A DNA stretch of 64,000 nt, from the NCBI GenBank assembly GCA_904063045.1, contig CAJFCJ010000005.1:1069988-1133987 (forward strand), read 5' to 3'. Origin of the DNA: Dimorphilus gyrociliatus (Eukaryota > Animalia > Annelida). The notes under the pieces were generated by a model. The model was not told where the DNA came from. It worked only from the letters and a program-made list of their open reading frames with translations, and made no database searches. Positions 2,038 through 25,873 of the stretch are shown here, in pieces. Both the position numbers and the translations under genes were made by a program. Each line of letters starts with the position of its first letter. Position 1 is the first letter of the stretch.

Positions 2038-4585
2038 CTAAGTTATTGGCGAAATAATGTTTTCTGTAATTTGAAAGTTGAATACTAATTTACACTTTTC
2101 AACGAATCTTAAGGCGTATAACTTAGGCATGAATAAGCATAAAGTGGTTACGGAGGCGTTTAATAAGCAGCAGCTTGCCAATAATATCATTCTAAATCTA
2201 TTGTCTTCAACTATAAAATAGGCTGGAACTAATACAATCCATACAAATAGTGTTGTACAAACTGAACCAAAAATTTGAGATGCTTCGTTAAAGTTTTCCG
2301 GTAGTTTTCTTGTTTGGAAAGCGAAAAAGCAACAAATTATAGAAATTAATATATTAAATACCAGGGGTGAAATAATGCTAGCCGCTGGTAAATTACAAAT
2401 GATCTGTACGCGTTTTTCATGTGGATTTGGTTGATTTAAAGTTGATTTTATAGACCCAAACGAAATCATTATAGAAAGTATTGTCAACTGTAAAAATTGA
2501 AACAATTATAAAGTGAGAAATAGAAGAGAAAAATATTTAATATAATATCATAAAAATCTAATTAGAAGCCATACAAACTTGTAATAATATTATGATAAAT
2601 GAAAATATTATCTGATGTTTATCTTGGATAAACCTAAGACCACGTTTACCGGTTGAACCTGCTTTGAAAATTCTTAAAAGTCTTATTACTTTACATAGAA
2701 ATGGAGCGTAAATTATACTGTAGGATAAGTTGAAGGTTATGTAACCAATTAGGCATGTTGCATTAGTTGGTTTAGCTACAATAAAATATATTGTTAAAAA
2801 TGTTGTTCCACTTCCAATTAGACTAATATTGCTTAATAGTATGGAACTTGCTTTAATTAACTTTTGGTCTCTTTTTAATCTATAAATAACACAAATACAA
2901 AATGTCAAGAAGAGGCCTGACGATGATACAATTAGAAGGAATATGCTTTCCGGTTCATGCCATTCCAGAAAAACAGGATCTATTGGGGAGCATATTAAAG
3001 ATGTTTCTACATCTGGCCAAGTAAACTGTGGACATGGCTTACAGGATGAATTATTAATTATTATCTCATTATTTCTGCACTTCCGGCATTCCCAACAACA
3101 GGATATCTCTGTTTTCAATGTATAATACTTAAGTGGGCATGGTTTACTACATATTGACTCTGGTATAGTGTTATTTATCCATCTAATATTATGATTTAAT
3201 TTCATAATATTTCTAGATCTAAGCCATTTACCGACTTTAATCTTTTTACCATCTCTTCCATACTGCATTATATCGTAATCTCCAATAACGTCACCGTTTC
3301 TATCGAAATTTAAATATCCAGTTAGCGTACTGTAATTACCTTTTCTAAGAGTGTTTAGCAGTCTTTCTCCGCTAACGCACTCTTTTAGTTCTCTACCCTT
3401 GGCCGATGGACAATAGACATCCCTAGCGGTCCGCATTGCCTCGGCTAATACAAACGTTGCATCATAAATTCCAGACGACCATAACCCTTCTAAAAATGAT
3501 TTAGGACTAGCCGTAATGTTCCACGACTTTTGACATAATTCTTTGACAGAGCTAGTATTCCATTTACAATTGAATAAATCCGACCACAATTCATCTATCC
3601 AGACGTTATCTTTAGAATTGTCTGGATTCTGGGATATGATAACAGAAACGAAATTTGGTATATTGGCCAGTGGAAATACAGTATAAAAACTTCTATACGC
3701 CGCTGTACGTCTATGGTCTTGATTCAAACTCATTAAAGTATCCATACCAATAAATATCTTATTATCAAGACCAGGAAAGGCTGGCAGTTTAGAATAGAAT
3801 ATATTTACATCGTTCCAGGAGAGTAGTATAACAATAACGTTCCAAGTGGAAGTCATTGTCAACTTTCTCATAATACTTTGCCACGTTTCAAACGTTTGCT
3901 TCCCTGGTACCATTTCATCAATTGCCAAACAAATTCCTTTGGCTTCGGCGGCTTTTCTCAATTTTTTAGCTCCATTCTCCCCATAGGAACCCTCAGAGTA
4001 GATTAATGAAAAATAATTCCAGTTTAGAGCCGATATGAACTCAATCACAGCATTTGCCTGATACCGATCGGGACTGACAATCCTTGAAAAATAAGGAAAT
4101 CGACTTTTATCGGATAATTCGTCGCTAGTTGCCATTCTCGATAGTTGTGGTATTCTATAGAGGCTCAGGAGAGGAGAAACCATCATTGACTTTGTGCTAG
4201 AATAGGGCCCGATAACGGCGTTTACGTGGAAAATTTCGGCTGGTAAAAAATATAAGCTCTCCCCCAACGCAGCCAGATTACTATCGCAATCGTCAAGGAT
4301 GGTATAACCTAACTTTATTCCTTTAATAAAATTGTTATCATTGATCCTCTTAACAGCCAGTCTTACCGCGACCGTATCAAAATAGCTGTTGACCCTAATC
4401 CTGTTACTGCAATAGTTACCAATACCGTCTTCCTTCTCGTGAACAGAGATCAAATAACCAATATTTAAGTCACCCATGTTATATTCATATTTTGAATTTC
4501 TATTAAAAAATGGATCAAAACATTGGAACGTATTTAATTCGATGATAAAAATGCACAAAAACAAAGAATATCTTTTACGATACAT
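2038..4585 (-). CDS. Class C GPCR, metabotropic glutamate receptor-like, 818 aa; exons 4585-2579 and 2487-2038
   Basis: Signal peptide, Venus flytrap domain (VIGPYSS, ATSDELSDKSRFPYFSR, EGSYGE), Cys-rich CCWECRKC domain and 7TM with TRKLPENFNEA and FMPKLY. A phase-0 intron at 2488-2578 joins the two ORFs. Confidence 0.93.
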
Positions 4586-6692
4586 CGAGATAAATGTGTC
4601 TTTATTACTTCGTCATGACTCAGTTAGTGAAGTGTGGCGACAAACTTTGTTTTTCTTCCCTTTTAACGAGCAGGGCGGCGCTTTTCCACATGTATCAAAA
4701 TGTAAAGCGATAATATAAATTAACTATAAGGTTTTTATTTTCAATACATTGTTTGTGTCCTTTCTTCCGTTTCCAAGGTATCAACAGGCGTCTACATACA
4801 GAAAAAAACTAATTGTTCTTTTCTTTTATTCCATATACTGATGCTTGACGTCTATTTTCTCAATTGTTTGTAAAGTTTCTATCAGCAAAGTTAAAAGTAC
4901 TCGGCATTGAAAGAGGCAATATAGAAGTTCAAGTAAAACAACTGTTTACCCTTTTAGTGGCCTTTACAATAAAATAAAAACATTTTAGATCTCAACTCGT
5001 TTATTAAAAGCTGAACTGCTGAGTTATTGCATAAAAAATAAAGTCTTATTCATTAAAGGATTAGGACAGTAGTTTATTTATCCTGTTGTAGTTGAGTAAA
5101 AAAGATGAGGAGGGGGAAAATGGAGTTTATTTTGCGATTTATATATCAAAGGAAAAAATAATTGAGACTTTGTTTGCGACAAAGTGTTTATTGAAGTAAA
5201 ATGAGGATACAAACTAGAAAAGAATCTCCCCAGTATTGACATTGTAAATGTTTATGAAGTAAAAAGGTTGATTTAAACTAACTACCAAGAAATCTAAGAC
5301 GTAACAAAATAATAAAAGGCCTAGTAACAGTTTATTGAGTACAAATAAAAAAATCTCAAGTGAGGAGAGAGAGAGAGAGAGAGAGAAGGAAAGACTATAA
5401 AAAACGACAATTCTTAGAATTTCCACAAGTTTACCAGAGATAATGTATTTTCAGTGAGATATTGCGTAAAAGATCATATAGGTTGTGCTTTTTAGTTCCT
5501 CTCTCTCTCTCCCACACTTTCTTTGAATTTGCTGATTGTAGTTTATATTTGTCACTATCTATATTAATTAATTATATAGAGACATTTATTTGCATAGTTT
5601 CTATATTTCTATTCACAGATGCATTCCAATACATTCTATTATTGTTCTACATTGATTAACTATCAAACAACAATTTCAGTTTTCAATTATCTAATATTTT
5701 CAATCTCTGAAATAGACTACCTCATCAATAAAGTACTTTTTTGATCATTAAAATGCTAATTTCGCTAACGAACGCCATCTAGTTGATTTTTAAACGTATG
5801 CATACGCGCTGGCAAATGCATCCAGATGTATATATATATATATATATAGCTAGATGTACAAATATATATTAGTAATATATATATATATATATACTATATG
5901 TATATCTAATATATAGCTACGCCGCGTGGACATGAAAAGACTAATGGTTGTCAGTTTTTTCTTAGGAGAATTCAATCAAAAGTTCGATGATCGAGAGAGA
6001 CACGCAATAAATCAGAGTGAAGAATTCATTCTCTAGTTTCTTACTAAGTTTTTATTATTGGATATATACAATATATATGTATATATATATGCCATTCAAA
6101 TGAACTATCAGGCTATTTATCCTCATTCTTACTTGTCATATAGGTTGTTAGCCTCTTGAGACTACTTTTTCATTGCGGATAGTTGCTTGACCCTTTGATA
6201 TCTGTTTTACAATCAAAATTTGTAGGCCTAAGTTATCTAGGGTCAAGATTCTAAAAGAAAATATCATTTCATACAGATATTAAAAATTTTACCCTACTAC
6301 TTTATCTTTTTCCTTTTTCTCTTTCTCACTCTAATTGACTCTCTTCTTTCTTATCTTTATCCACTTTTCTTAATCTTTATCTATTATAGATTTCAAATAG
6401 TTTTTTAACACATCAACCTTTAAAGTATCTATAACTCTCGTTTTGTTCTATGTCATAGGATAATATGTCTATTGTTCTTGTAAAAATTTACCTAATTTTT
6501 CAGACTTACAGACCATCTTTTATCAACTTTAAGTAGAGTCTGTATATCATTTTCTCTTCAAGTCACCTCCTTTTAGCCCTCAAGTCTCAATAGTATAACC
6601 TAGTAACATATGAGATTAATTAAATTTTCATCTTTTTCGTTCTTGTTTAGTCGGTTTTTATGTTAGAGAAAGAAGATAAAAAACTAAATGCT

Positions 6693-6805: not shown

Positions 6806-9264
6806 CCAAGTTACTCTATCTATTTAGCCTCAAAGAAGATGATGCAATAAATCAGTCAGCTTAAAGTCATCTTTAATATGCTTTCATACTTTTTCTACTC
6901 ATTCTTTCTTTAAAATATTTCAATTGCTTCTTGGCTTTGTTCACTTTCTGAATTCATTTAGATTTAAATATTTATAAAAGGAAAGATAACAATTCAACTT
7001 TTCCCTCAATTTTCAAAGATTCAAACTTTTTACTTTTTCTTTTCTCAAAGTTAGTGAAAAAATACATTAATATTCGTAATTCTGTGTTTTGGACTTCGTA
7101 TTTCATTCATCTAGTAGGCCTTTAAAGAATATGAAACTTAATACTAAATTTTTGACCTCTTTTAGACATAATAATTTTTTTCAATTTCGGTTTAATGTTT
7201 CAGCTATAGTGAAGGTGAGATGTCTAATGTCTCGACTATATTTCAAGACCGTAACTAACTAGCTGCCAAGGTCTATAATCTTATATTTTTCTCTCGAGGT
7301 TACTGACCTCTATTGTCCCAATTTTTCAAAATGCTTTCTAAGCTTTAAAGAAACATTTTCGCATTTGTTTTTTGTTAAAATAGTTGCGTAATTGTAAAGT
7401 TACATAGCAAAATCTTATTTAAAAGAACTATAACGCCTTTGAATGAAGTTATGAATGAACAAAAAAAAAAAGATGAATGACAGTTCTTTTTATTTTTTTA
7501 AATGAAATTATGTCATATTTAATCTTATATATAGTAGTGATAATTATAAAATACAATAAGTTCCTATGCTAAGTTAAATAGTGCAAAGCACTTTTATAAT
7601 CTAATTTTTTTTATAAATGTTATCCATAGAAGTGTCTTAATTTTCAACATTATTATGATTAATTGATCTGCTTTAAATGTCTGCGCAACATGATTTTTAA
7701 TTGACCTTAAATCAACTTCATTTAAGTTTTATTACCGTCTTGACATTCCTTCTCTATGGAAATCACATATTTGTTTGTAATTTTAACTCTTTCGAATTTC
7801 TCATCAAAAACTTTTCCTCTCTGTTCTAATTTAAAGCCAAGAGATGTAGTCTTAGTTTATGGACAACCTCATTGTTTATAGAGACACGTCTAAACTTTTT
7901 ACAAACAATTTTTTTTTCGGGCTAGAAATGTTTGGATTATAGGCTGTCAACAGTTCTATTTCTGGAAGTTTATAGCGGAAGTAGGATCTAGACGCGTCCA
8001 ACAGACTATGATATATATAACAAAAAAAATAATCGGTTGTTTACCCGACCTACTTTTATTTCAATCCGGTTGTAATTTTGAACCGATTTGGTAGAGTTTC
8101 TGACAAACTTTACAAGTTTGTCATGCACTTAAAAAGGATATGAGCCAGATACAAAAAACGAAGAAAAAGGTAAGGAATGTTGTCAAAGGAGAGTATAAAA
8201 AATCAAAAAATTAGATATTTCTAACTTACATATAATCGCCAATTAAGATTAAAGAGATTTAGAAAAAAAAAGAGATTAAATCAAAAGATCTCTATATTGT
8301 TTAAAAATCATTTTTAAAACAACTCTTGAAAGATAAAAAGTTCAAAGGCTATGTTTAACTTAAAATAGAAGTGAACTGTAAGATATCTTATATAAACTCT
8401 TTAAAAACAATGAAAACAGATTGTGTAATCCACACGATGATTCTTTATTTTATAGTTAAAATTCATACAATAATAAAAATCTGTTAAATATAAAAATAAT
8501 TGGTTTAACTGTCTAAGGTGTAGGCTGTAAAAAAATTATTAGGGAATACGATATACTAGAACAAAATTAAAATTTTTGGTCTTCCCTTTCTCTTTCCCTC
8601 TCTCTCTCTCTCTCTCTCTCTCCACTTTAACATATTAAGATGTTCAAGATAAAACGATTATGAAAAATAAAAACCAGGTCAATGCCTCTTATACTAGGAC
8701 TAATATGCGGAAAATACTATATATCTTTTATCTAATTTAAATTATAAATCAGGTCTATATTACCTTTTTAGGACACTTTGTTATCAAGAGCTATACTCTG
8801 ATAATTAAAAAAAACTTTATAACCAAGTAAATGACAATGATACGGAAATCCTTGCCTTGGTTTTTCCCCTTCTGTTTTTATAGACTACTAGTAGACTAGA
8901 GCTTACGTAAAACTTTCGATTTCACCTTATTGCAAAGGTTTTATTCGAATTATTCATTATGGTAAGAAGTATTCCTTTAAAAATGATATCATTAATAAGC
9001 CGTATATATGGTTAACCACCTTAACCATTTTCGTAAGCTTTCTGTTCTCTTATAATTGTATTAGATGAATGTTTATTCTAGTAGACAAATACTATTCATT
9101 AAATCAGCGGGATATCTTTACATATCGTCCAAGTAATTTCTGTTGTTTTTGTTCAACATCTTTGGGATTTCTATTTAAGGCCTAGCTCTTTTCTTAATGT
9201 AAATCTCAACGTATTAAATTTAAGTGGTGAAAAAAGCATATACAGTATATATGTACAATATGAT

Positions 9265-12350: not shown

Positions 12351-13280
12351 CCTAACTGACTGACATGATCAAACACGTCTGTGTCGGAAGGTACATTTAG
12401 GTTGACGTCAGCTAGTTGAGAAATGCTCAAAAAATTAGGAAATACAAGTTCAACATAAATTGTTATAGGCCTTTTGTTTATTTCATGCAGAAATAACCGT
12501 GCTAGACCAGAAAAAACCTAATGAGTCATTTTACGTTAAAAATAAACTGAACGTTTTAGAAATCTCAAATAGATTCAAGACAATTAGAAAAAAGGGCGGG
12601 GGAGGAGAAGAAGAAGTAAAAGAAGAAGAAGAAATAGAAGAAAGGGCTGTTATTTAGGATATAAGACATAAAAAACGAGTTTTTCCAGTTAGTCTTATAA
12701 AATGTTATATATATTGTATACATATAAAGATATAAATTTATATATATATATATTTATATATATATTGAAATTTTTATCTACTCATTAACACACTTTCTTT
12801 ATCATGAACAAAATTAGAATTATCTCTAATCTTACGTCAATTTCATTCACAATGACTTCTCTTACAGATTGTATTTATACATTTTAGAGAAACGAGCAAT
12901 AACGATTTCTCATCTTTATTTACTTCCCTTCCTTGTTTTCCAAATTAATTAATAAAGAAAATTATTCAAATTGTTTAAATATAGATCGTCCCTGTTTTTT
13001 TTATTTGTTAGTATAAAGAATATATTTATGACCCGAATTAACTTCATAAATTAAAGATAGATGTATTTAATACCTGTTTTTTTTTGTAGTTTGATGTTCT
13101 CTCTATACAGTTATGATAATATTTGAAGGAAATAAAGCGAAAATATGCTTAATTTGTAATCTTTGCTTGATAATTCAGGCGATTACGAAATATAGTTCTA
13201 TATCACATGTGCTTTCCGGATTATAAGAGAAAATTCAACAAATCTTACTTTTAAATTTTACGCGCTAAGAATTCCAGCTG

Positions 13281-16200
13281 ATGCGCATGCGCTGTAATCT
13301 AATGGCGACTAGACGAATTCTGCAATCTTTCTTCTGCAATACACGTTATTATTCCAATATCGTAGCTAAATCTAAGCTAAAAGCTCCTCTTTTATTAACT
13401 GGCATTGGCATAACCTACTTTTATGCGAATCATAAACGAACATGTCAAGCTGTTTATGCCCATGTAAGTTTGCTTTTTTCGGCCTTTTGTTTGGCTGTGT
13501 TTAATTAAAACGAGTCACTGTGAGTGATCAATCCACAAAAACCTAATTGATTATGACAGAAGTTACGGAAAAAATTAGCGAACCCTCGTAATTTTCGACT
13601 TTAGATGGTCGAGCGATAATAAGTGGATTTGACGTATAAATTATACAAAAGAATCCCTATTACGTAGATCAAAGAACGTTAGACGCTGTTAAATTAGATG
13701 AGGGTTACGTAACTGAACGAATTGGGAACTATTTCGAAGGCGATGACACTTCTAACCGCGTTTTTTCTTTTTTCTTTTCCAACAGGCTAACACCTCGCCT
13801 GCTCAAACTCATAGAGAATTGAGATTCTTATCATTTGCCTCTGTGGATTTTGACGGCAATGTTTATATGACACCGCAAGATTTTCTGGATAGCGTTACCA
13901 ATGAAATACCTAAAGGTAACTTTTTCAAAACCCAAGATACAAAAACGCCACTAACATGCATTTCACAAGAGAGCGACCAACAATCAAAGACAATAACAAT
14001 TATACAATTAATAAGTTATATTATTATTATTATTACTATAGAAAAATAGCACTGATTCAATTGTTGTAGGTCATAGGTCAATCTTTAAGGCACTCGATTT
14101 ATCTATAGCTTCAGATTTGACAGTGTGATGACTTTTTGAACTATTTTTCCCTAACTATTTATCCATTATCTTTTAAAAAGAGCTTATACCGACATTTCAA
14201 AATAATAAATAAAAAAAAGAAGAAAAGATTGAGCAGAACGACCAGCTTAGGAGAATAATTGGAATTTTATTGTTTTAATATATGAACAAACAATAACTTG
14301 CTAAATTATCCAAAAAAATCTATTAAACTATTTGTTAAGGAGAAAACGCTAATGTTTTTTTTCTCTTTCTTTTTTTTTAATAGTTTATTTTACAATCAAG
14401 CTTTAAGGATAATTTTTAATTCTCTTGCTGTATAAAAACCGATATATCTCAGTTTTATTGACTAATAAAGAAGATAAGATTATTTATTTCTTTAAAGAGA
14501 TATTTAAAATATTTATTACATAATAGAATAATTACTTACAGCATAGAAGTTTTGTCCTTCTAGGCCAACTTTCTTTGAGAAGTTGTCATAGAAAGGTTTT
14601 CAATATGATGTATCACACGAAATAACTTCTCTATCAACATATTTGTTCTTATATATTATTAAAAACACCGCAATAATTATTAATTTTCGCTGACAATGCA
14701 AACTCATAGCCTATAAGTTACAGATTATTAGCTTATTACCTTTAATTTATATGTATTCTAAAAATTGTTGTTATCCTATTTCTTCATTCTTTTTTTTTTC
14801 TTTTTTGGTATAGAGCAAGACCAAAATAAAAAATTGATCACCTATAGCTGCTTTTAAAATTTCCGTTTAATAGTTGTTTAGAAACAGAGCATACTCGTCT
14901 AGTTTTTTTTTTATTTTGCTGATGTAGGCCTTTAAATGACCTTCGTAAATGTCAATGACAGCATTTTTTCTACCCTGAAAAACTTTTAACTGTTTTGGAA
15001 ATGATACAATTTTCTTTTTGTTATTGTAATTTTACCAAGTATTACAACATTTTTCTTGATACATTAACTGTCAATGACCCCGACCTGTAGGCGGGCAGCT
15101 GTCTACATATATAGCGCGTGTAACAATGTATCGTGAATTGTTTACAAGAGTTCTTAAAAAGGCTCGGAGTGCAGGAGACGATTGCGTAATCGGAAAATGT
15201 CCAGGCACGTTTTCCTTAATCCGTTATTGTGATGATTCGCTTACGGAGAGAGAATTAGACGTGATAAATTTTACTACTTGAAAGAAAAGCTCAGTTGTAA
15301 AGTTATTATAGAAGCCAGACGGAAACCGGATCCGTTTATTATCAGTAGTAGACTGTAGAAAACTCAACGGGTGTTTTCGACTATAAAAGTCTGTTACCTT
15401 GGTAACAGACAAGCCCTAGACATCCGATAAAGAATATGAAAAAAAATGCACCCAGTGCAAACTTCAAAAGATAGGGAAAGTGACGTACATTGTTCAATTG
15501 TTTATACTTTAACACGTTAAATCAATATACCAATGGTTCTGTTATCATTTCGCTATCGTACTGAAATATAGGTCGCTAATATCTGTAAGATGATTTCCAG
15601 ATGGTTATTGGGAGAGACTAATAGTATAATTCCTAATTTGTATTTTGAACAGCAAGGGCAGGCAGGAAAAAGTTGGAAAAGAATGACGTTGAGAAACTCT
15701 TACGAATGACACCGTCCAAAAGAAAAAGTTCTGAAAAATTCTTAAGAGGAACCGGAACGAACGGTAAGCGTTAGACAACTCTAGAATATCTTTAAAGCAT
15801 TCCTTCGAAATTTCGTAATTCAAGTCCTTCAAAGGTCAATTTTCTTTCCGGATTTTGTACAATGTTTAGATACACTTAACCTAATTTTTCTCAATGAGAA
15901 AAGCACCAAAAGACAATAATATAGGACATTTTAAATATTAAATATATCCATATAATCGGTTAAAAGTTATACTTTAACAAAACTTATGTTACTATAGAAT
16001 TGAAGTCTTTTTTTAAAATCAAACCTTGGACTCTGGATGTCGAATTTAACCATCCGATTGTACAATTAATATCCTACCGTATAAGTTTAAAGTTTATTAA
16101 CCTCTTATTGCAATATTTTTAACTTGATTTATCTTCAAACCTGTAACTTAAACACTTTTTTATAATAATGTTATTATCTTAAAGAAAGAGGATAGAAAGA

Positions 16201-17338
16201 ATTAATAATGATCATAGAAAAGAGCAATACAATTTGTAAACTTTCAAGTTTTTCTTCGCAATAATTTCCCCCAATTAAACGCAATATATACATATCTAAT
16301 ATATACTGTATATATATTAGTATATTATAAGATTCAGTATTCTTATCTGATAGGCTTGATTTTCTTTTGAAATTTATCTTTACTTATTTTCAAAATAAAT
16401 TGATCTTATCAATTTGGTTTTTAACTCTACGAAGTAAAAATATTGTTCAGGCAAAAAGAAAAATTTTACCCTTACCCTTTTTTTTCTCTTTTTCTGTCGT
16501 TTTCCCTTTTCTCACCGCTTTCTTCTCTATTTTGTTTATATATCGTTTAGACTTACCGACTATTTTTTTAAGGTCTTTTCATCAATTTGCAATTAATCGT
16601 CTGCCAAAAAAAATCGATTTCAAAACATGACAATACTTATTATAGTCTTTAACATCGCCCTAAAAGTACGATTGCATAAACTTGTCTCAATTTGCTCCCT
16701 TCTGAATGCAATTAAGTCATTAGGTACAATTACGTACAAATAGATTATGTAATTACATTTTAACTGAAGGCAAAAGACACCTTCGAAAGTGAGATGGAAA
16801 TGAGTTAATGTCAAATATTTTCTTCACCCTCCAAATCAAAAATTCAACTGTTACTTATTTTACATTTGTTAACCAGAACATATACCTATCATCGGATAGA
16901 GAAATTACTTCACATAAATTAAAATTAATGTCTTTTTAGGTTATTTTCTATTACTTTAAGTGATAATAAAATGAAGGATTTTGTATAAATTGAAAGAGTT
17001 TTGAAATAGGTAGGTGAGTGAAAGAAGGACTTTCTGTAAGGTATTTTAATATGAGGAGCAAGTAGAATCTTGTCAACATTAAATGAATTTCTCGAAGAGT
17101 ATAAGAGGGTAATAGCTACAGTACACAACGTATACAATACTCGGTATAGTATGTTTGCAGATACATGTACTATATATAGAGGGGCATATACTATGAAAAA
17201 AAAAAGGAAGGTGGGGGGAGAATTGGAAAGCCACGGGAAGCAAAACAGAAAGAATTAAGATAAAAGGGAAAGTGTTTTGAAAAATAAATATTTTATTCAG
17301 AATAGAATCAAAGTCACCAATAAAAAGTTGTAAAAGAG

Positions 17339-17380
<42 letters not shown>

Positions 17381-17749
17381 ACATCTTCATTGTAAAACTT
17401 TCAACATTTTATTTAAATGACAATTTTATGGTATAGGTACGACCGAATGAAAGAAATATAATAGAATATATATATACTGTATAAATAGTAGAAACAAGTT
17501 TAACAAACTCGCTCTATACGTGTGTCTATAATTATCTATCTTAGTTCTCTTATCCGGCTCCAATATTTAATGATAGTTTAAAAAGATAAAACCATAAATA
17601 GATTATTTTAGCTACTTTACTTAAGGCGTACCATACGGTGTTCTTTTACACAACTTCTCGAATATTATATCATGCCCGTATGCCTCTTTAAAATATTTAC
17701 GACATGTTATTTACGCTAGATTTCATCTGTAAAACGTGGAAAGAGAGAG

Positions 17750-17785
<36 letters not shown>

Positions 17786-20700
17786 GGGGGAAGCGAAAGT
17801 TACTTTCTTATAAATATTTGCTCTTAACGAGTTATTTAGTAATTTCTAAATATACAGTATAATTAAAAATTTTTCATAGCAAATGACAGATTTAATAAAG
17901 GTGTTAAAGGATTATTTACATGTTATTCTCGAACGTTTTCTATTACAATAAAATACAATGTAAATGAATACGATCCAAAATTATTTACAAGCCAGTTTTT
18001 ACTCATCAATTATACTCTTCTTTTCGTACGATTATCGAATAACTCTGTTAAAAATTAATTAAAGAGAAAGCAAACACCTAAATTCGTATTTTAAAATACT
18101 TTGTTTTTAAAGAAAGAAAAAGTTATTGTTACTTGTTTACTTAAAAACATTGCAACAATTATAATTTTTCTGTTATATTTTTCATCAATCATAGAGGTGA
18201 ATGTTGAAAAAAAATATAACCAAATCTAATTGCACTTTCTCAACAACAGGGAAAGTGAAAAGTTCTTAACAAAATAAACAGAATACATCTGCCTGCTCGT
18301 GCCCAAACGAATAATTAAACACTTTCCTTGGGCGTCTAATTAAAAAGTTTTCTTAACTGATTTAACGGATTACGTCACGGATCCTGGGGTTTTACACTTT
18401 TAATGCGATTTGTTTCTAATTTGGCAGACCTTTAACAGAGTCGGTGCCTGTGGCTTACCCCCATTTTTCTCCTTGAAGTTAACTTTCAAAGCTTGTACAC
18501 GTACCGATTGGATCTCGTGTAAACATTGGCGTTTGCCAAACTTTTTCCACGCTAAGCTTTCTTCATTTATCTATTTCATTCAGGAGATAAGATTTCGTTC
18601 GATACTGAACCATTAATTAGAAAAAAATGCTTTTATCAAAAATTTGCCAATTGATCGTCTACGTTAGATTTATTTAGCAATCTTCCCCCCCTTCCTTTTG
18701 ATTTATATCGCAACGTTGATCTTTGTTTAGGAGAGTTTGTTATTTCTTACTCCTTAACCCACAAATCTTATTCTAAACCAAGTATCTAATGTGAAACTAG
18801 AAAAAGTATTGGTGAGTCAAAGAAAAAAAAAATTGGTATAATTGCCAATTCGGCGGAAAACCTTTTTAGAAAGTCAACAAAATACCAAGAATTTTCACTT
18901 ATTAGCTATATAGATCTATTTAAGAATAAAGCACGTCAAAATTTAGGTCTAACATACCGACTTGAGTCAGTCATTAGTAAAAATTTTATACCTTGTCATT
19001 TTAACACTTTAGCTAGATGTTTACTCGAATAACTTCGTACGACTTTGTTACCTCTTTCTTTAATAAATACGGTCGTCGTAGGTGGTGTAATTTGATTAAA
19101 ATCTTCGAAATATATATTTCTACGGGATTGTATCAAATAAAAAAAAATCGCACCATATTTTAATCTAATATTGATCTATTCATATTTATGTCTTTAAAGA
19201 GTTTATCGTATTTCTCTTCTAATTAGAGAAAATTTTCTACGATCTTAATTTAACATTGTTTTCGAATGACAAAATTATTAAAGAGTCTTTCATCACTTAA
19301 ACTATTAGCCTAATAGGCATAAAACTAATTTAATCAAAGCAAAATACCTTATCTTTTACTTTCCCTCTCTATTGTCAATGAATATTTGATATAATAGTTT
19401 GATTTTTAACAACCCACATCCACTTTATATGACGTTATTGTGGATAGGTATTGAAATCACCGACAATTGTTGACATTACGTGCTGGACAGCGGTCAATAA
19501 CGAATTTATTGTTTATTTACAGGTCTTATTTCGTACACGGAATATTTATTCTTGCTGTGCGTGCTTACAAGTGAGTTCAAATGTTCTGAATACTCGTAAA
19601 CAATTTGTTTATTTTACTTTCCCCCGTTCAGAACCAAGATCGGGATTTCGAATAGCCTTTAATATGTTTGATACGGATGGCGATCAACGCGTGGACAAGA
19701 ATGAATTTTTAGTAGTATGTACAATATTTTTTATTATATATACAAGTATATCCGTATATATATCGGAATATATATATATACTATGTATACATTCTAATAA
19801 GTAATATATATATATATATATATATATTCATCTTTGAATATATGTACTATCTCTTTTTTATCTTTATTATTGATACCAATCGTCTGTCGATTTCTTTTTT
19901 CATTCGTCGGTTAGATATTGAATATTTCTCTATTTGAATGCAAAAAATTCATTATTATTATTATTAGTTGTAGTGGTCTTAGATTATTTAAGGAGAATTG
20001 TACACTTAGTATCAAGTTTTTTTTTCTTTTTATCAAATTTATCTAAATATTTTTTCTTCTAAGCATGAATTATTTTTCATATAATGTTAAATTTACGAAA
20101 ATCTCTTTTCAGTTATTTTTTTATTTCTCTCTTAATTTTTTTTTTCTTTTTTTTTTTAATTAATAAGACAAAAAATATATCGCTAAACACATTCAAGGTC
20201 ACAAACAAATCAATCTAATCCGTAGACTAGACAATAACCTTTGATTTAATTAGAATATGTTTGACAAAATTGAATAACTGTCCTCTTATTATATTCTTAA
20301 GAAGAAGATTTAAAGTGATTTAGTTTAACTGTTCGATTAAGAGAATAATTTAAACTTGTCTAAATTTTAAATTAATCTAATTTACAAAAGTAGGGTAAGA
20401 ATGTTTTTTCTTTTTTTCTTAGTTGAAGATATTTTCCGTACTGATTTAAAGCTTTTGCTCTCTGATATATAAGAAAAATTAATACCAAAAAGTAAATTGT
20501 AGTATTTTATCAATTCAATGGACATTTAATTTCTCAATAAGCTCGGTAAAGTTATCGAAAAGGCTTCTGAAGGAGATGGATGGAGTACAGCAAATGTAAA
20601 AGAAGATAGCATAAATATGGTATAATATAAAAACAAAATATAACAACTATAACACCTTCTATTTCTAGTCGCAAGGTTTTGGTCTTAGCAGCTTAATATG

Positions 20701-21573
20701 GTCACTTAATTATCTTTCTTCTTATCTAACCGAATAATTAAATTAAATAGCTTTACTTCTATCTAAACAAAACTTTTGCACATCATTTCAAGAAAGAAAT
20801 CCAAATTGCTTGCTAATATTTGCGAAATATTCGAAAGCACAAGGCGAACAAAAAGAACAATAACACAAAATAGAATAATTAATTGTCAAGTTTTATGTTA
20901 AAAGAACAAAAATATGATAAAGATTATTTTACTGCAGATAGTAAATCATTTTAATAATCTCGTCTGTGGTTTTTACAAAACGTTTAAAACTTTCTACTAA
21001 CCAAGGTCAACGATCATTATAAATGAACTTGATTTAAGACAAATCTGTAAAAATCAACATACGATTATTATCAGAAATTGTGCAAGTTCACTATGGTGAG
21101 AGAGAGCTAGTGAGAGAGGAAAAAGAGTATTTTTATCATAGTTAAATATACACCTCATAAAGGCTATTAATTAAATTTTAAGGACATATCTCTATATAGT
21201 AGATTAATTACAATCTATTGTATCTTCTATCCTCATTAGTAGAGTTTTTGTTTTAGAGTAGATAATTTTAATCTCTTTTTTCTACGTTTGATCAGTACTT
21301 ATTAACAATTAGAGGCTAAAAAAGAAAAAAAAGATCATTGTCTCTCAGTTAATATAGCATATTTCTGTTTTTCTTATATAAGAATAGAAAGGAACAGGAA
21401 TAAAATATACAAATAACATCTCTACTTGAGTCATCTCTGTTTTGTTTATTTATCTTAGAGAAAGGAAGAAGTACTTTTATTCATTATATCATGAAAATTT
21501 ATGGAAATAATAAAAGAAATTTATAGTTTTTCCATTAACTGAAATTTTTAAATATTTTTTTAAATAGTTTTTT

Positions 21574-21604
<31 letters not shown>

Positions 21605-24192
21605 GCTCTCTCTCTCGCTCTCCCCCCCCCGCTCTCTGGCTCTCCCGCCCTGAGCCTCCCTTCCCCCTACCCCTATTACTTTTACCGCCTAGAAGCCGTC
21701 TTCCATTCTCAAGCACTCTCGAAACAATTAATTCATTTCTCCCCTCTAACACTCTCTCATCATCTTATCGGTACCCATTACTCATTCTCTATTACAAGAT
21801 AAAACGGATAAAATTAAGACTTCCCCTAACATGAATTAGGAATTTCCTCCTTTTGGTTTTTTGTTTTTTTTTACGTTCTGCAGTTGTTGGACGTGTTCGA
21901 AAGAAACACGCAGGACCTAGAAGTTAAACGGTCGGACAACCACCGAGCCAATATTTGGAAATTGTCGTTTGTACGTTTGCTTTTGATGAAAAAGCGATCG
22001 CTTTCCCATTGATTTTGTTTCGCAGGAGAATGTGTATTTTTTTTTTAAGTATACGCGTAAATGTATGATGCATGTACACAGTATTATATATATTATACTG
22101 TATATATGCTATACATACACACACATATATATATATTAATATATATATATATATATATATATATTAGTATATATTTATATTTAAATTTACTGTCAATTGT
22201 TTTGAAACCGGGTGATTTTAATTTTGCTATTTAACTTATTTGTTGTTATTAACGTTTTATATTTATTTTTTGCATCTAATCATCATTTATTATTATTTTT
22301 TTTTTTTTTGGGTTTCTCTCTTTCTCTCTTCTTATCTATCGGTTTTGTTCTTTTAGTTTTTCTTTGCACGATTCGCGAAAATATTAAAAACTAAAAACAA
22401 AAAAAAAATTAAAAAGAAAGTGGCAATGGGAGTTTTAAAAAGATAGAATATACTCTTTTTTTAGTATATACAGTTTAATCTGTCTTTTATACTGTATAAT
22501 AGGAAAAATATGAGCGACTATTCTGTTTCAAAGAAATAGTTTATTCTATACGCAAATAAACTTAAAGATTCTAATTAAAAATAACTTGATATCAAAACTA
22601 CAATCAAAACAAACATAACATAGTTTATTTTATGATAACTGTTGCTACCATACACTTTATATACTCTGGAGAAGCTATAGTCATATTGATAAAGTGAAAG
22701 ATTATCTATCAATGAAATGAAATGTCTATAATTCTTATTATATATATATATTTATATTAATCTCGTTTTTCTTTTCCTCTTTTAACTCTTTATTCTTACT
22801 ATCCGCTTTATAAGTTGGTAAATTTTATTAATTGATTTACTGTATTGATTGAAAGGAGAATATCGATGAATTGGCATAGTTTATAACTTATTTAAACTAC
22901 TTATGATCAAATTTTCATCGATATACGCTAAATTCTATCAAATTAATACCAAACTGAGGTTATTAGGTTCTTATTTTTATAATGTTCGAAAAACATCCGT
23001 AACAATTGCTCCAAATGCGAATTGGTGTTTTTTTTTTGTCTTCGAACGTACCAAACTTATACGACTAATTGTACTTTGTTATGTAATAATCTTTAAAAAT
23101 AGGATTATCCACATGCTTGCCACTTATTAACCGTTTAGAACCAATAGCTTTTTGCATGCCTTATTTAACAGAATGGACGGTATTTTATGTGTATAAAAAA
23201 CAGTATATATAAAGGTTTTGCGTCGTACCAGCATATTGACCACTTTATACACGAAATTATACGGTGCCCAAACTAATGATGGGGCTGTCCGTGGTCATCG
23301 TCTAGACATATTCAATCGATTGAACAAGCGTGTCATTTGAAAATCTTATTTACCGAACAGGTTTAACCGAAACTGTCAAAAAAAAAACAAATTTTGTATA
23401 TTCATTAGTATAATATAAAAAAATCAATCAACAAACCAACCAATTAGCAAAACAGAAACCTCTTTGCCCACTTTCTTTTTTCTTAAGCTAATTAGAGGAT
23501 TTTGCGATTCATCGCTTCATTAATCCATGCGATTGCCTTAATCCAAGATAAACCGCAAAATAATCTACCGATTAATCTGTTTATAATTAAGAATTAACCA
23601 TGCACGGTTTATGCAGCTAGAAAGAATAATACCGCAAAACGCCGACGATAACCCAGCTAATAACGACGTACGTCTTCAAAAACATTTGCTTCTTTTATAT
23701 ATACTTTTTATTCTTTCTTCTCAAAATGCACGACCCCTTTCCTCACTCTCTCTTCCCCACCCTCTCCGCTTTAGTTTTTGGTTTGAAAATTCTATTTTAT
23801 TACTCCTTTTCTTACACTTTCTAATGCATTAATATTTTAGTAAGAAGAACAAAATTCTATAATCGCCTGTTCTTTCTTTATTTATTTATTTACTCTCTCT
23901 CTCTCTATTTTTTTTTCATCTTTTCTTCTAACTTAAATGAATTTTATCCATTTCTGAGAAATTAAAGAGGATGTTGATTGTATAAATTTGTTTCTTTTCT
24001 CTTTGTATATGATTTATATTGTATATATAAAATGATATTTGCAAATGATTCCTCTTTAATCTACTTTCTCTTGTGTATGTGCACGAAACATCCGCTTTAT
24101 TCTCCCACCCCCCCTCTCCCCTCCTCTCTCGCTCTGTATCAGCCTGTCTATGTATCTCTCTCTCTCTCTCACACACACATATACACACACAC

Positions 24193-24229
<37 letters not shown>

Positions 24230-25873
24230 TGTGTGTGTGTTTGTTCTCTAGCTATTCTTCTTTTCTCTTTTTATTTTATTTATATTTTTTAAATTTTCTC
24301 CTTCTATTCTATTCGTGTTCGGGCTTGTTAGAGCATTGATGGCATTTTTGTGGTCAACCAATGGCCGATTGTGTTGTTTCGCTAACGTTGCATGTGGTCT
24401 CCGACATATATATTTATGTCTGTTTATAGAAGATCCTTATTTGCATGATCTAGTTTAATTTTTCTTACATTTTTCAAATTTCAAAGCGAAAGCATGCTGG
24501 GAATGTCGGACGCTGGTCAACCGCCCTGCTATTGTTAAATATCCAGGGCTGTTGTATAATTAGATTGAGGCGTCCAGGCTTTTTCTACAATTTACTGTTG
24601 TTATTTTCTTTGATTTGTAGCCCACTGACTTTTCCTCAGTGCACGATTTATTTTTTTTTGAGCTAAGAAACTATTGCTTGTGCTATCTTCCTTAACTTTT
24701 CGTGTGTGCTGCCATCTATCCAACGTTCGTTCATTGTCTCATCATTTTTGTCTTCTTTCCGATTAAAGGAACAAGAGACAAGTGTGCAAGATACAACTCT
24801 AACCTATCACTTCTTTGGGTCTAGAGGCAGAGACACGCTCAAGTACGAAGAGTTCTCAAAGTTTATGGAAAATCTGCAAACGGAAGTATGTATATATACT
24901 AATATATATACAATGGGTATATGTTGCGCCATCTATCGTACATTAGATGAAATTCGTAAAAGCAACATCTTGAACTTATTCAGGACAAAGTTAGAGAATG
25001 TAGGAATTTTTACGTCATAAATCAAGAATAAGCTGTTTTGTTTGGCCATATTGATGAATGATGTAATAAATATGTATTAAATCTTCCCTCTCAAAGCAGA
25101 CTCTGGAGCAAATGGACATATTTTATTTTAATAATCGACCATTAATATTCTATCTTTTGAATTTAATGAATTATAAAAGCTGCTTCAGAATATTAACAAA
25201 TAACAATATAAAAACTAGGTACTGCAATCCGAGTTTGAAGACTACGCCAGAGGAAAGTCAACCATTACAGAGGAAAATTTTGCAAAGATTCTCCTCCGCT
25301 ATACAGTCTTATCGGAGGAACAACATGACGAATATCTAAATAGATTACGTAAACGTATAACTAGTGGCAAGGTTGGTTTTATTTCTCTCGTCTTAAATGA
25401 TAAGAAGACAATTAAATCTTGAAAGGAAATAATAAGGCTATTGTTTTTTTTTTATTTTTTTAGGGAATCGACTTTAAGGCATTCAAAGATTTCTGTCAAT
25501 TTTTGAATAATCTGGACGATTTTGCAATTGCAATGAGAATATATACGTATAGTGAACAGCCGATTTCCGAGAGTAAGTGTCTACTTTAATCTCTCTTCTC
25601 TTCCAGTTTTACATGTTGAATTATCGTTATATATTTTCAGGTGAGTTTAGAAGAGCAGTTAAAATATCGACTGGACACGAATTGGACTTTCACGTTGTTC
25701 ATACAGTGTTTCAACTATTTGATGTAGATGGCGACAATCAATTGAGCCATAATGAGTTTATAACTGTTATGAAAGATCGCGTCCATAGAGGGTTTAGATC
25801 ACAAATCTTCCAAAAGAAGAGATTCTGGGAAAACTTTAAGGGCTGTGTCCGCCGAGAAATGAAACACTCCTAA
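13281..25873 (+). CDS. MICU3: Mitochondrial calcium uptake protein, MICU2/3 type. Exons 13281-13463, 13786-13915, 15653-15763, 19523-19570, 19632-19714, [cassettes 20542-20619, 21884-21970, 23617-23667], 24769-24885, 25219-25371, 25464-25572, 25641-25873
   Basis: Mitochondrial-type leader; YMTPQDFLDS, GLISYTEYLFLL, EF-hands DTDGDQRVDKNE and DVDGDNQLSHNE, DTTLTYHFFG, MKDRVHRGF and a C-terminal Cys (FKGCVRREM). All junctions are GT-AG and phase-compatible. Confidence 0.92.
15389..15410. promoter_or_regulatory. Perfect 10-bp inverted repeat containing an RFX X-box-like motif, in MICU intron 2
   Basis: GTCTGTTACC-TT-GGTAACAGAC. The core GTTACC-TT-GGTAAC fits GTNRCC(N0-3)RGYAAC. TATAAAA lies at 15382-15388. 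Confidence 0.45.

What the first reader, a model, noticed from the sequence alone, without database searches (positions are those of the whole stretch)
20542..23667. Three parallel phase-0 cassette exons right after MICU EF-hand 1, possibly mutually exclusive
Seen: exon A 20542-20619 (LGKVIEK..., 26 aa), exon B 21884-21970 (LLDVFER..., 29 aa) and exon C 23617-23667 (LERIIPQ..., 17 aa). Each is AG/GT-bounded, stop-free and phase 0-0. All begin with L-x-x-[VI]-[IF], the pattern that continues the helix after EFLV (LQEIF in human MICU3, recalled). Inference: duplicated alternatives that tune Ca2+ gating of the uniporter by tissue. Constitutive inclusion of all three (72 aa) is also length-plausible.
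Basis: partly seen in the sequence, partly recalled or inferred. Interest (0 to 1): 0.7.

Follow-up and report, generated by a model that had tools for sequence, protein, structure and literature searches.

The report
Optional linker exons in annelid MICU3
Three small in-frame exons sit just after the first calcium-binding site of the worm's MICU3 gene, a regulator of mitochondrial calcium uptake. They lie where molluscs, ticks, insects and other worms also splice this gene alternatively, so they are probably optional pieces used in combinations, not strict either/or alternatives.

Summary
Exons A (20542-20619, or 20542-20595), B (21884-21970) and C (23617-23667) are AG/GT-bounded, stop-free and phase 0-0. 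They lie between the EF-hand-1 exon (ends 19714) and the next constant exon (starts 24769) of the single MICU3-like gene of Dimorphilus gyrociliatus.

- **Not chance:** about 0.12-0.18 such ORFs starting L-x-x-[VI]-[IF] are expected in this gap, and three are seen. Their GC content matches the coding exons, not the introns.
- **Conserved motif:** B carries the NIW[KQT][LM] motif found at the same place in other annelids and a brachiopod.
- **Other species:** RefSeq isoforms of oyster, abalone, clam, nemertean, tick and horseshoe crab differ exactly here. Exons starting the same way are used alone, together or not at all.
- **Strict exclusivity is unlikely:** no feature that enforces it was found.

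Best reading: these are frame-preserving cassette exons, with B as the core, that change the end of the EF-hand-1 exit helix and the linker behind it. This is a new, unannotated member of a kind already annotated elsewhere.

The parts
19632..19714 (+). Constant exon encoding EF-hand 1; ends in phase 0 after ...EFLV, donor GTATGT
   Evidence: Pfam EF-hand_1 and EF-hand_6 hits. Best solved-structure match is human MICU3, 6agi residues 103-129. The same EFLV|GTAAGT boundary is present in Capitella and Helobdella.
20542..20619 (+). Exon A, 26 aa, starts LGKVI; weak acceptor tract; donor GTATAA. An alternative in-frame donor at 20595 (GTAAAAG) gives an 18-aa form
   Evidence: It lies between the EF-hand-1 exon and the NIW exon. 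Candidate exons of 17-18 aa sit at the same position in Capitella (L001:14198-14248) and Helobdella (L006:3756-3809), and an 18-aa unit is present in annelid transcript P0157.
21884..21970 (+). Exon B, 29 aa, starts LLDVF and ends ...NIWKLSF; the strongest polypyrimidine tract of the three; donor GTACGT. Probable core exon
   Evidence: The NIW[KQT][LM] motif is shared with Capitella, a capitellid transcript, Helobdella, P0157 and Lingula at the same position in the protein. It is a discrete exon in Capitella (L001:15097-15195) and Helobdella (L006:7653-7817).
23617..23667 (+). Exon C, 17 aa, starts LERII; donor GTACGT
   Evidence: Its start resembles the mollusc 'beta' exon (LERVF/LESVF) and the segment after the NLW unit in annelid transcript P0152. 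The similarity is weak by BLAST.
24769..24885 (+). Next constant exon, phase 0-0 (pseudo-EF-hand 2 region, ...DTTLTYHFFG...LQTE)
   Evidence: Matches human MICU3 6agi 206-240 at E 4.9e-08. The deposited model CAD5114177.1 starts inside it, at MENLQTE.
13786..13915 (+). Upstream constant exon (...FASVDFDGNVYMTPQDF...)
   Evidence: tblastn with annelid MICU3 proteins; boundaries read.
15653..15763 (+). Upstream constant exon that the ORF listing did not single out (...LEKNDVEKLLRMTPSK...)
   Evidence: tblastn; boundaries and phase read.
19523..19570 (+). Constant exon (LISYTEYLFLLCVLT)
25219..25873 (+). Three 3' constant exons (25219-25371, 25464-25572, 25641-25873 with the stop codon), including EF-hand 4 and the conserved C-terminal Cys
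   Evidence: 100% identical to P0002 / CAD5114177.1.

Best explanation
A, B and C are genuine coding exons of the single MICU3-like gene of Dimorphilus gyrociliatus. They encode the variable stretch that follows EF-hand 1: the last two turns of its exit helix, then a largely disordered linker leading to pseudo-EF-hand 2. Each exon is phase 0-0 and a multiple of three in length, so any subset keeps the reading frame. I infer that they are independent cassette exons used in combinations. B, the NIW exon, would be the core exon that is usually included, and A and C would be optional. I also infer that each begins L-x-x-[VI]-[IF] because each must be able to finish the EF-hand-1 exit helix when spliced directly to 19714. 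Shown here: the exons exist, are not chance, and sit at a splice hotspot conserved across protostomes. Inferred: alternative use in Dimorphilus itself, and any effect on the Ca2+ threshold or on pairing with MICU1.
For: Enrichment over chance and exon-like GC. B carries the annelid/brachiopod NIW motif. In Magallana gigas, RefSeq X2 (428 aa, alpha only), X3 (421 aa, beta only), X4 (401 aa, neither) and a Logan transcript protein (448 aa, both) differ exactly after EFLV, and the lengths add up. The same site varies in Haliotis, Mya and Tubulanus and in ticks, Limulus and insects. Annelid transcripts carry different subsets: unit 1 alone (P0154, P0178), the NIW unit alone (P0005), the NLW unit plus a following unit (P0152), and unit 1 plus the NIW unit (P0157). 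Capitella and Helobdella have the same EFLV|GT boundary, a discrete NIW exon, long flanking introns and further candidate exons in them. The introns here are 0.8-1.6 kb against a genome median of 66 bp (PMC7854359). An AlphaFold model of P0157 continues the exit helix 8 residues into the first variable unit, then is disordered, then has a low-confidence helix over the NIW motif.
Against: Similarity of A and C to exons of other species is weak (BLAST E 0.5-5 even in a 5 kb search space). The annelid subsets come from different species, so they do not prove alternative use within one annelid. All three together give 79 aa between EFLV and DTTL, against 78 aa in human MICU3, so constitutive inclusion is also length-plausible.
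Confidence: 0.55

Rival explanations
1. All three exons are constitutive in Dimorphilus and together build a long MICU3-type linker of about 79 aa.
For: The length matches human MICU3 (78 aa between EFLV and DTTL). Annelid transcript P0157 carries two units plus a tail (60 aa). All phases are compatible.
Against: B and C keep the helix-completing start, which only the first exon would need. The orthologous exons are optional in every well-sampled species. The exons are flanked by introns 12-25 times the genome median, in a species whose splicing is adapted to short introns.
Confidence: 0.2
2. One reading: strictly mutually exclusive exons, with exactly one of A, B or C in each mRNA.
For: Shared start motif and phase. 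One exon plus the constant part gives 24-36 aa between EFLV and DTTL, like MICU2 and many invertebrate MICU3 isoforms. Some species' RefSeq isoforms use either/or pairs (ticks, Tubulanus, Lingula). Zebrafish micu3b is listed with an MXE event in an rMATS table, position not given (PMC7349279).
Against: No enforcing feature was found. The introns exceed 0.8 kb, so there is no steric block. All sites are GT-AG with no U12-type donors. All lengths are multiples of 3, so double inclusion is not removed by frameshift. No specific docking/selector pairs were found, only generic (TA)n microsatellites. Isoforms with both or neither exon exist in oyster, abalone, clam and Limulus. The exon lengths differ and similarity ends after about 7 residues.
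Confidence: 0.1
3. Only B is a real exon. A and/or C are chance ORFs or decayed relics that are no longer spliced.
For: A has a poor polypyrimidine tract and weak donors. A and C lack significant similarity to other species. ORFs of 17-26 codons are not rare in AT-rich DNA.
Against: With B taken as real, two more motif-bearing AG/GT ORFs by chance has a probability of about 0.01 at 0.12-0.18 expected. Their GC is exon-like. Candidate exons lie at the corresponding positions in Capitella and Helobdella.
Confidence: 0.15

Closest known systems
RefSeq-annotated alternative linker exons of invertebrate MICU3 (e.g. Magallana gigas isoforms X2/X3/X4, Haliotis asinina X4/X8/X9/X10, Dermacentor andersoni X3/X4/X5)
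   Same: Same position (directly after ...EFLV of EF-hand 1), the same helix-continuing start ([LIVM]-x-x-[IVL]-[FILV]), small frame-preserving exons, and two or three of them in a row.
   Different: The Dimorphilus exons are unannotated and diverged in sequence, so orthology of A and C to particular mollusc exons is uncertain. Their use in transcripts is unknown. Those isoforms are automated predictions, and I found no paper that describes them.
MICU1.1, the muscle/brain splice variant of vertebrate MICU1 (micro-exon 5')
   Same: A small alternative exon in a MICU protein, reported to change uniporter regulation (PMC8909990; PMC7055370).
   Different: A different paralogue and, from my own recollection, a different position in the protein (not checked here). 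It is a single micro-exon, not an array.
Drosophila MICU3 (CG4662) isoforms A and C
   Same: Alternative coding exons are recognised in FlyBase: 'isoforms A and C ... cover all predicted coding regions' (PMC6506686). Insect proteins also carry one or two units at this site.
   Different: The paper does not say where the isoforms differ and found no clear functional difference between them. I did not align the fly isoforms.

Membership tests
MICU2/MICU3-type uniporter regulator | Canonical EF-hand 1 and EF-hand 4 | tested here: met
   Pfam EF-hand_1 and EF-hand_6 reach their cut-offs on exon 19634-19714. On exon 25640-25870 EF-hand_1 reaches its cut-off (29.4 vs 25.4 bits) and EF-hand_6 falls just short (24.5 vs 25).
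MICU2/MICU3-type uniporter regulator | Closest solved relatives are MICU3, then MICU2, not MICU1 | tested here: met
   6agi (MICU3) E 1.1e-10 and 4.9e-08; MICU2 about 1e-7; MICU1 7.9e-05 and above 5.
MICU2/MICU3-type uniporter regulator | Conserved C-terminal cysteine, which established knowledge links to the disulfide with MICU1 | tested here: met
   A Cys is present in the C-terminal ...FKGCV..., and the aligned column is nearly invariant in 60 homologues (C458). Disulfide formation itself was not tested.
MICU2/MICU3-type uniporter regulator | Mitochondrial targeting sequence / complete N-terminus | not tested
   Only a probable first exon was seen, in the 13269-13505 ORF. No targeting prediction was run.
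Mutually exclusive exon cluster | Tandem homologous exons of the same phase and similar length | tested here: inconclusive
   Same phase (0-0), but lengths of 78 (or 54), 87 and 51 nt, and similarity only in the first 5-7 residues. No DNA repeat joins them.
Mutually exclusive exon cluster | Exactly one exon of the cluster per mature mRNA | not testable with these tools
In orthologues the rule is broken: isoforms with both or neither exon exist.
Mutually exclusive exon cluster | A mechanism that enforces exclusivity (steric hindrance, U2/U12 incompatibility, frameshift/NMD, or competing RNA pairings) | tested here: not met
   Introns are 827-1646 nt. All sites are GT-AG and the donors are not U12-like. 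All lengths are divisible by 3. Only generic (TA)n/(CA)n tracts pair.
Frame-preserving cassette exons | Symmetric phase and length divisible by three, so that skipping or inclusion keeps the frame | tested here: met
Frame-preserving cassette exons | Both inclusion and skipping are observed | not testable with these tools
   Seen for the exons at the same position in other species, not in Dimorphilus.

The most novel reading that the evidence does not exclude
The stretch just after EF-hand 1 of MICU3 is an ancient, protostome-wide (possibly bilaterian) combinatorial splicing module. It swaps the end of the Ca2+-sensing helix and the linker behind it. This could give animals that have only MICU1 plus one MICU2/3-type gene, as found here for Dimorphilus and reported for Drosophila, several uniporter gatekeepers with different Ca2+ thresholds. 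The module has survived even in the miniaturised Dimorphilus genome, where it occupies a 5 kb gap about 75 times the median intron, and it went unannotated there and in part in Capitella and Helobdella.
Probability: 0.35. Interest if true: 0.6.

Novelty: new member of a known kind. Interest (0 to 1): 0.35.

Why it matters
MICU proteins set the calcium threshold at which mitochondria take up Ca2+. In the papers I could search, the only well-studied splice variant is MICU1.1. If the exons after EF-hand 1 of MICU3 are optional across protostomes, isoform choice would be a cheap way to retune the sensor without gene duplication. Simple RT-PCR and Ca2+-uptake assays could test this. In practice, the deposited Dimorphilus model (171 aa) misses about two thirds of the gene, including EF-hand 1 and these exons, so gene-content and orthology tables for this species are wrong at this locus.

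Tried and rejected
- **Dimorphilus transcripts in the protein databases.** An exact look-up of P0002 found no contig. A word search with P0002 returned only the deposited 171-aa protein, and the next hit was 62% identical.
- **P0157 linker region search.** It found only P0157 itself.
- **Blind tblastn.** I searched 141 linker sequences against the 5 kb gap. Exons A-C did not rise above low-complexity noise (best: B E 0.54, C 0.81, A 3.1). Cross-phylum orthology of single exons is therefore not claimed.
- **EF-hand profile.** Pfam EF-hand_1 matches stop at profile position 23-24 of 29 in every isoform. The profile does not show that the variable exons complete the motif; only the AlphaFold model suggests it.
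- **Docking/selector search.** It gave only (TA)n/(CA)n microsatellites. At 15 (TA)n tracts of 7 or more repeats in 64 kb these are common, so I gave them no weight.
- **Joined model.** Exons were searched one at a time by reference.
Full report
**The observation.** A (20542-20619), B (21884-21970) and C (23617-23667) are each preceded by AG and followed by GT, and each is open in the stated frame. The exon before them ends in phase 0 at 19714 with ...EFLV|GTATGT. The exon after them begins in phase 0 at 24769. So any subset of the three keeps the reading frame.

**The gene.** The window is from Dimorphilus gyrociliatus. The 3' part of the gene is 100% identical to CAD5114177.1, DgyrCDS3318.

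- The EF-hand-1 exon and the exon at 24769 match human MICU3 best (6agi, E 1.1e-10 and 4.9e-08), then MICU2, then MICU1.
- Pfam finds canonical EF-hands in exon 19634-19714 and in the last exon.
- From homology, and read in the sequence, the constant exons are 13786-13915, 15653-15763, 19523-19570, 19632-19714, 24769-24885, 25219-25371, 25464-25572 and 25641-25873. Their phases are consistent throughout.
- The deposited protein has only 171 aa and starts at a Met inside exon 24769-24885. The published annotation therefore lacks EF-hand 1 and the whole region in question.
- The genome holds one such gene, plus one other MICU-like locus on another contig.

**Is it more than chance?** I counted AG-started, stop-free ORFs of at least 12 codons that start L-x-x-[VI]-[IF] and end at a GT.

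- In 300 Markov simulations of the 5 kb gap the mean count was 0.18, and none reached 3.
- In the rest of the real 64 kb window, both strands, there are only three others, all hydrophobic AT-rich junk. That gives about 0.12 expected in the gap.
- GC is 37%, 45% and 43% in A, B and C. It is 35-42% in the constant exons and 21-33% in the four introns around them.
- Exon A has a second in-frame donor at 20595 (GTAAAAG). The resulting 54-nt form has 42.6% GC. By my count, the extra 24 nt are about 25% GC. I therefore think the 18-aa form is at least as likely as the 26-aa form.

**What other animals do at this place.** I extracted the stretch between ...EF[LV] and the next conserved motif (.TTL..FFG) from 144 homologues. 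Isoforms of one species differ exactly here.

- In Magallana gigas, RefSeq X2 (428 aa) has a 27-aa 'alpha' exon, X3 (421 aa) has a 20-aa 'beta' exon, and X4 (401 aa) has neither. A transcript-derived protein (P0216, 448 aa) has both. The lengths add up exactly.
- Haliotis asinina uses alpha, beta, alpha+beta, or beta plus a micro-exon. Mya arenaria uses beta or alpha+beta. Tubulanus uses either of two exons or none.
- Ticks, Limulus and insects show the same pattern with their own exons.
- Nearly all of these exons begin [LIVM]-x-x-[IVL]-[FILV].

**Annelids.** Transcript-derived annelid proteins carry different subsets.

- P0154 and P0178 have only a first unit (LDHLM..., LEQLM...).
- The capitellid P0005 has only a unit ending NIWTML.
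- P0152 has a unit ending NLWTLL followed by a further unit.
- P0157 has the first unit and then a unit ending NIWKLM.

Exon B ends ...NIWKLSF. This motif is also in Helobdella (NIWQLI) and in Lingula, so B is the orthologue of that unit. A lies upstream of B, as the first unit does in P0157.

In the Capitella genome (L001) the EF-hand-1 exon ends EFLV|GTAAGT. The NIW unit is a discrete exon at 15097-15195. The introns around it hold AG/GT phase-0 candidates at 14198-14248 (LENLL...) and 16088-16150 (LETIL...). In Helobdella (L006) the boundary is the same. The NIW exon is at 7653-7817, flanked by introns of 4.6 and 2 kb where the other introns are about 0.1-0.3 kb. There are candidates at 3756-3809 (LEQLL..., donor GTAAGT) and at 5626-5694, which is a second NIW-bearing exon.

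These short matches are weak by BLAST statistics (E 0.05-1). Blind searches of all linkers against the Dimorphilus gap do not lift A or C above noise. I treat the orthology of A and C as suggestive only.

**Structure.** I ran an AlphaFold model of P0157 with 60 homologues (mean pLDDT 73.9). The EF-hand-1 exit helix runs on for 8 residues into the first variable unit (to residue 221). It is followed by a disordered stretch (222-250, pLDDT below 50) and a low-confidence helix over the NIW motif (251-264).

Whichever exon is joined to 19714 therefore supplies the end of the exit helix. That would explain why every exon that can come first keeps the same hydrophobic spacing. The Pfam EF-hand profile itself stops at position 23-24 of 29 in all isoforms, so this rests on the model alone.

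**Mutual exclusivity.** I looked for the known enforcing features and found none.

- The introns between the exons are 827-1646 nt, so there is no steric block.
- All sites are GT-AG with ordinary donors.
- All lengths are multiples of three, so double inclusion is not removed by a frameshift.
- The only long complementary tracts are (TA)n/(CA)n microsatellites, for example 22113-22178 with 24179-24244. Such tracts are common in the window.

Together with the both-and-neither isoforms in other species, this makes strict exclusivity unlikely. By contrast, the introns are 12-25 times the genome median of 66 bp, in a species whose splicing is adapted to short introns (PMC7854359). That is the usual setting of optional exons.

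**What could not be done.** No Dimorphilus transcript protein covering the region is in the databases. Use of A, B and C in Dimorphilus is therefore inferred, not shown. All three together would give 79 aa between EFLV and DTTL, against 78 aa in human MICU3. Constitutive inclusion stays a live rival.

**Literature.** I found no paper on alternative exons after EF-hand 1 of MICU3. Zebrafish micu3b appears as an MXE event in an rMATS table, with no position given (PMC7349279). A fly study notes that MICU3 isoforms A and C together cover all predicted coding regions (PMC6506686). MICU1.1 is the known MICU splice variant.

**Verdict.**

- The most likely reading (0.55) is a set of frame-preserving cassette exons with B as the core.
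- The rivals are constitutive use (0.2), strict mutual exclusivity (0.1), and A and/or C not being real exons (0.15).
- It is a new, unannotated member of a kind already annotated in other species. Interest is moderate to low until transcripts are examined.

Noticed in passing
window 13269-25873: The deposited model DgyrCDS3318 (CAD5114177.1, 171 aa) starts at a Met inside exon 24769-24885. About two thirds of the MICU3-like gene, including EF-hand 1, is missing from that protein. I did not check whether a separate upstream model exists.
   Followed up: partly
window 19735-19860, 22095-22204, 24161-24250: Three (TA)n/(CA)n-(TG)n tracts lie just after the EF-hand-1 exon, just after exon B, and before exon 24769. 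The pair 22113-22178 / 24179-24244 is 80% complementary over 66 nt and would loop out exon C. Such tracts are common in the window (15 in 64 kb), so this may mean nothing.
   Followed up: partly
L001:14198-14248 and L001:16088-16150 (Capitella teleta): There are unannotated AG/GT phase-0 candidate exons (LENLL..., LETIL...) on either side of the annotated NIW exon. They are in the same order as A-B-C in Dimorphilus.
   Followed up: partly
L001:16582-16650 (Capitella teleta): Gene model P0151 contains a 23-aa segment that is absent from the closely related capitellid transcript P0005. It is either a mispredicted exon or a further alternative exon.
   Followed up: no
L006:5626-5694 and L006:3756-3809 (Helobdella robusta): A second short NIW-bearing candidate exon (good acceptor, donor GTATGT) and a LEQLL... 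candidate (donor GTAAGT) lie in the 4.6 kb intron upstream of the annotated NIW exon. This suggests exon duplication at this hotspot.
   Followed up: partly
G000:C9:796552-797211: This is the only other MICU-like locus in the genome. It is compact and presumably MICU1. Dimorphilus would then have one MICU1-like and one MICU2/3-like gene.
   Followed up: no
P0001 (Operophtera brumata KOB70282.1): The EF-hand-4 segment of this protein is repeated about five times in tandem. It looks like an assembly or annotation artefact.
   Followed up: no
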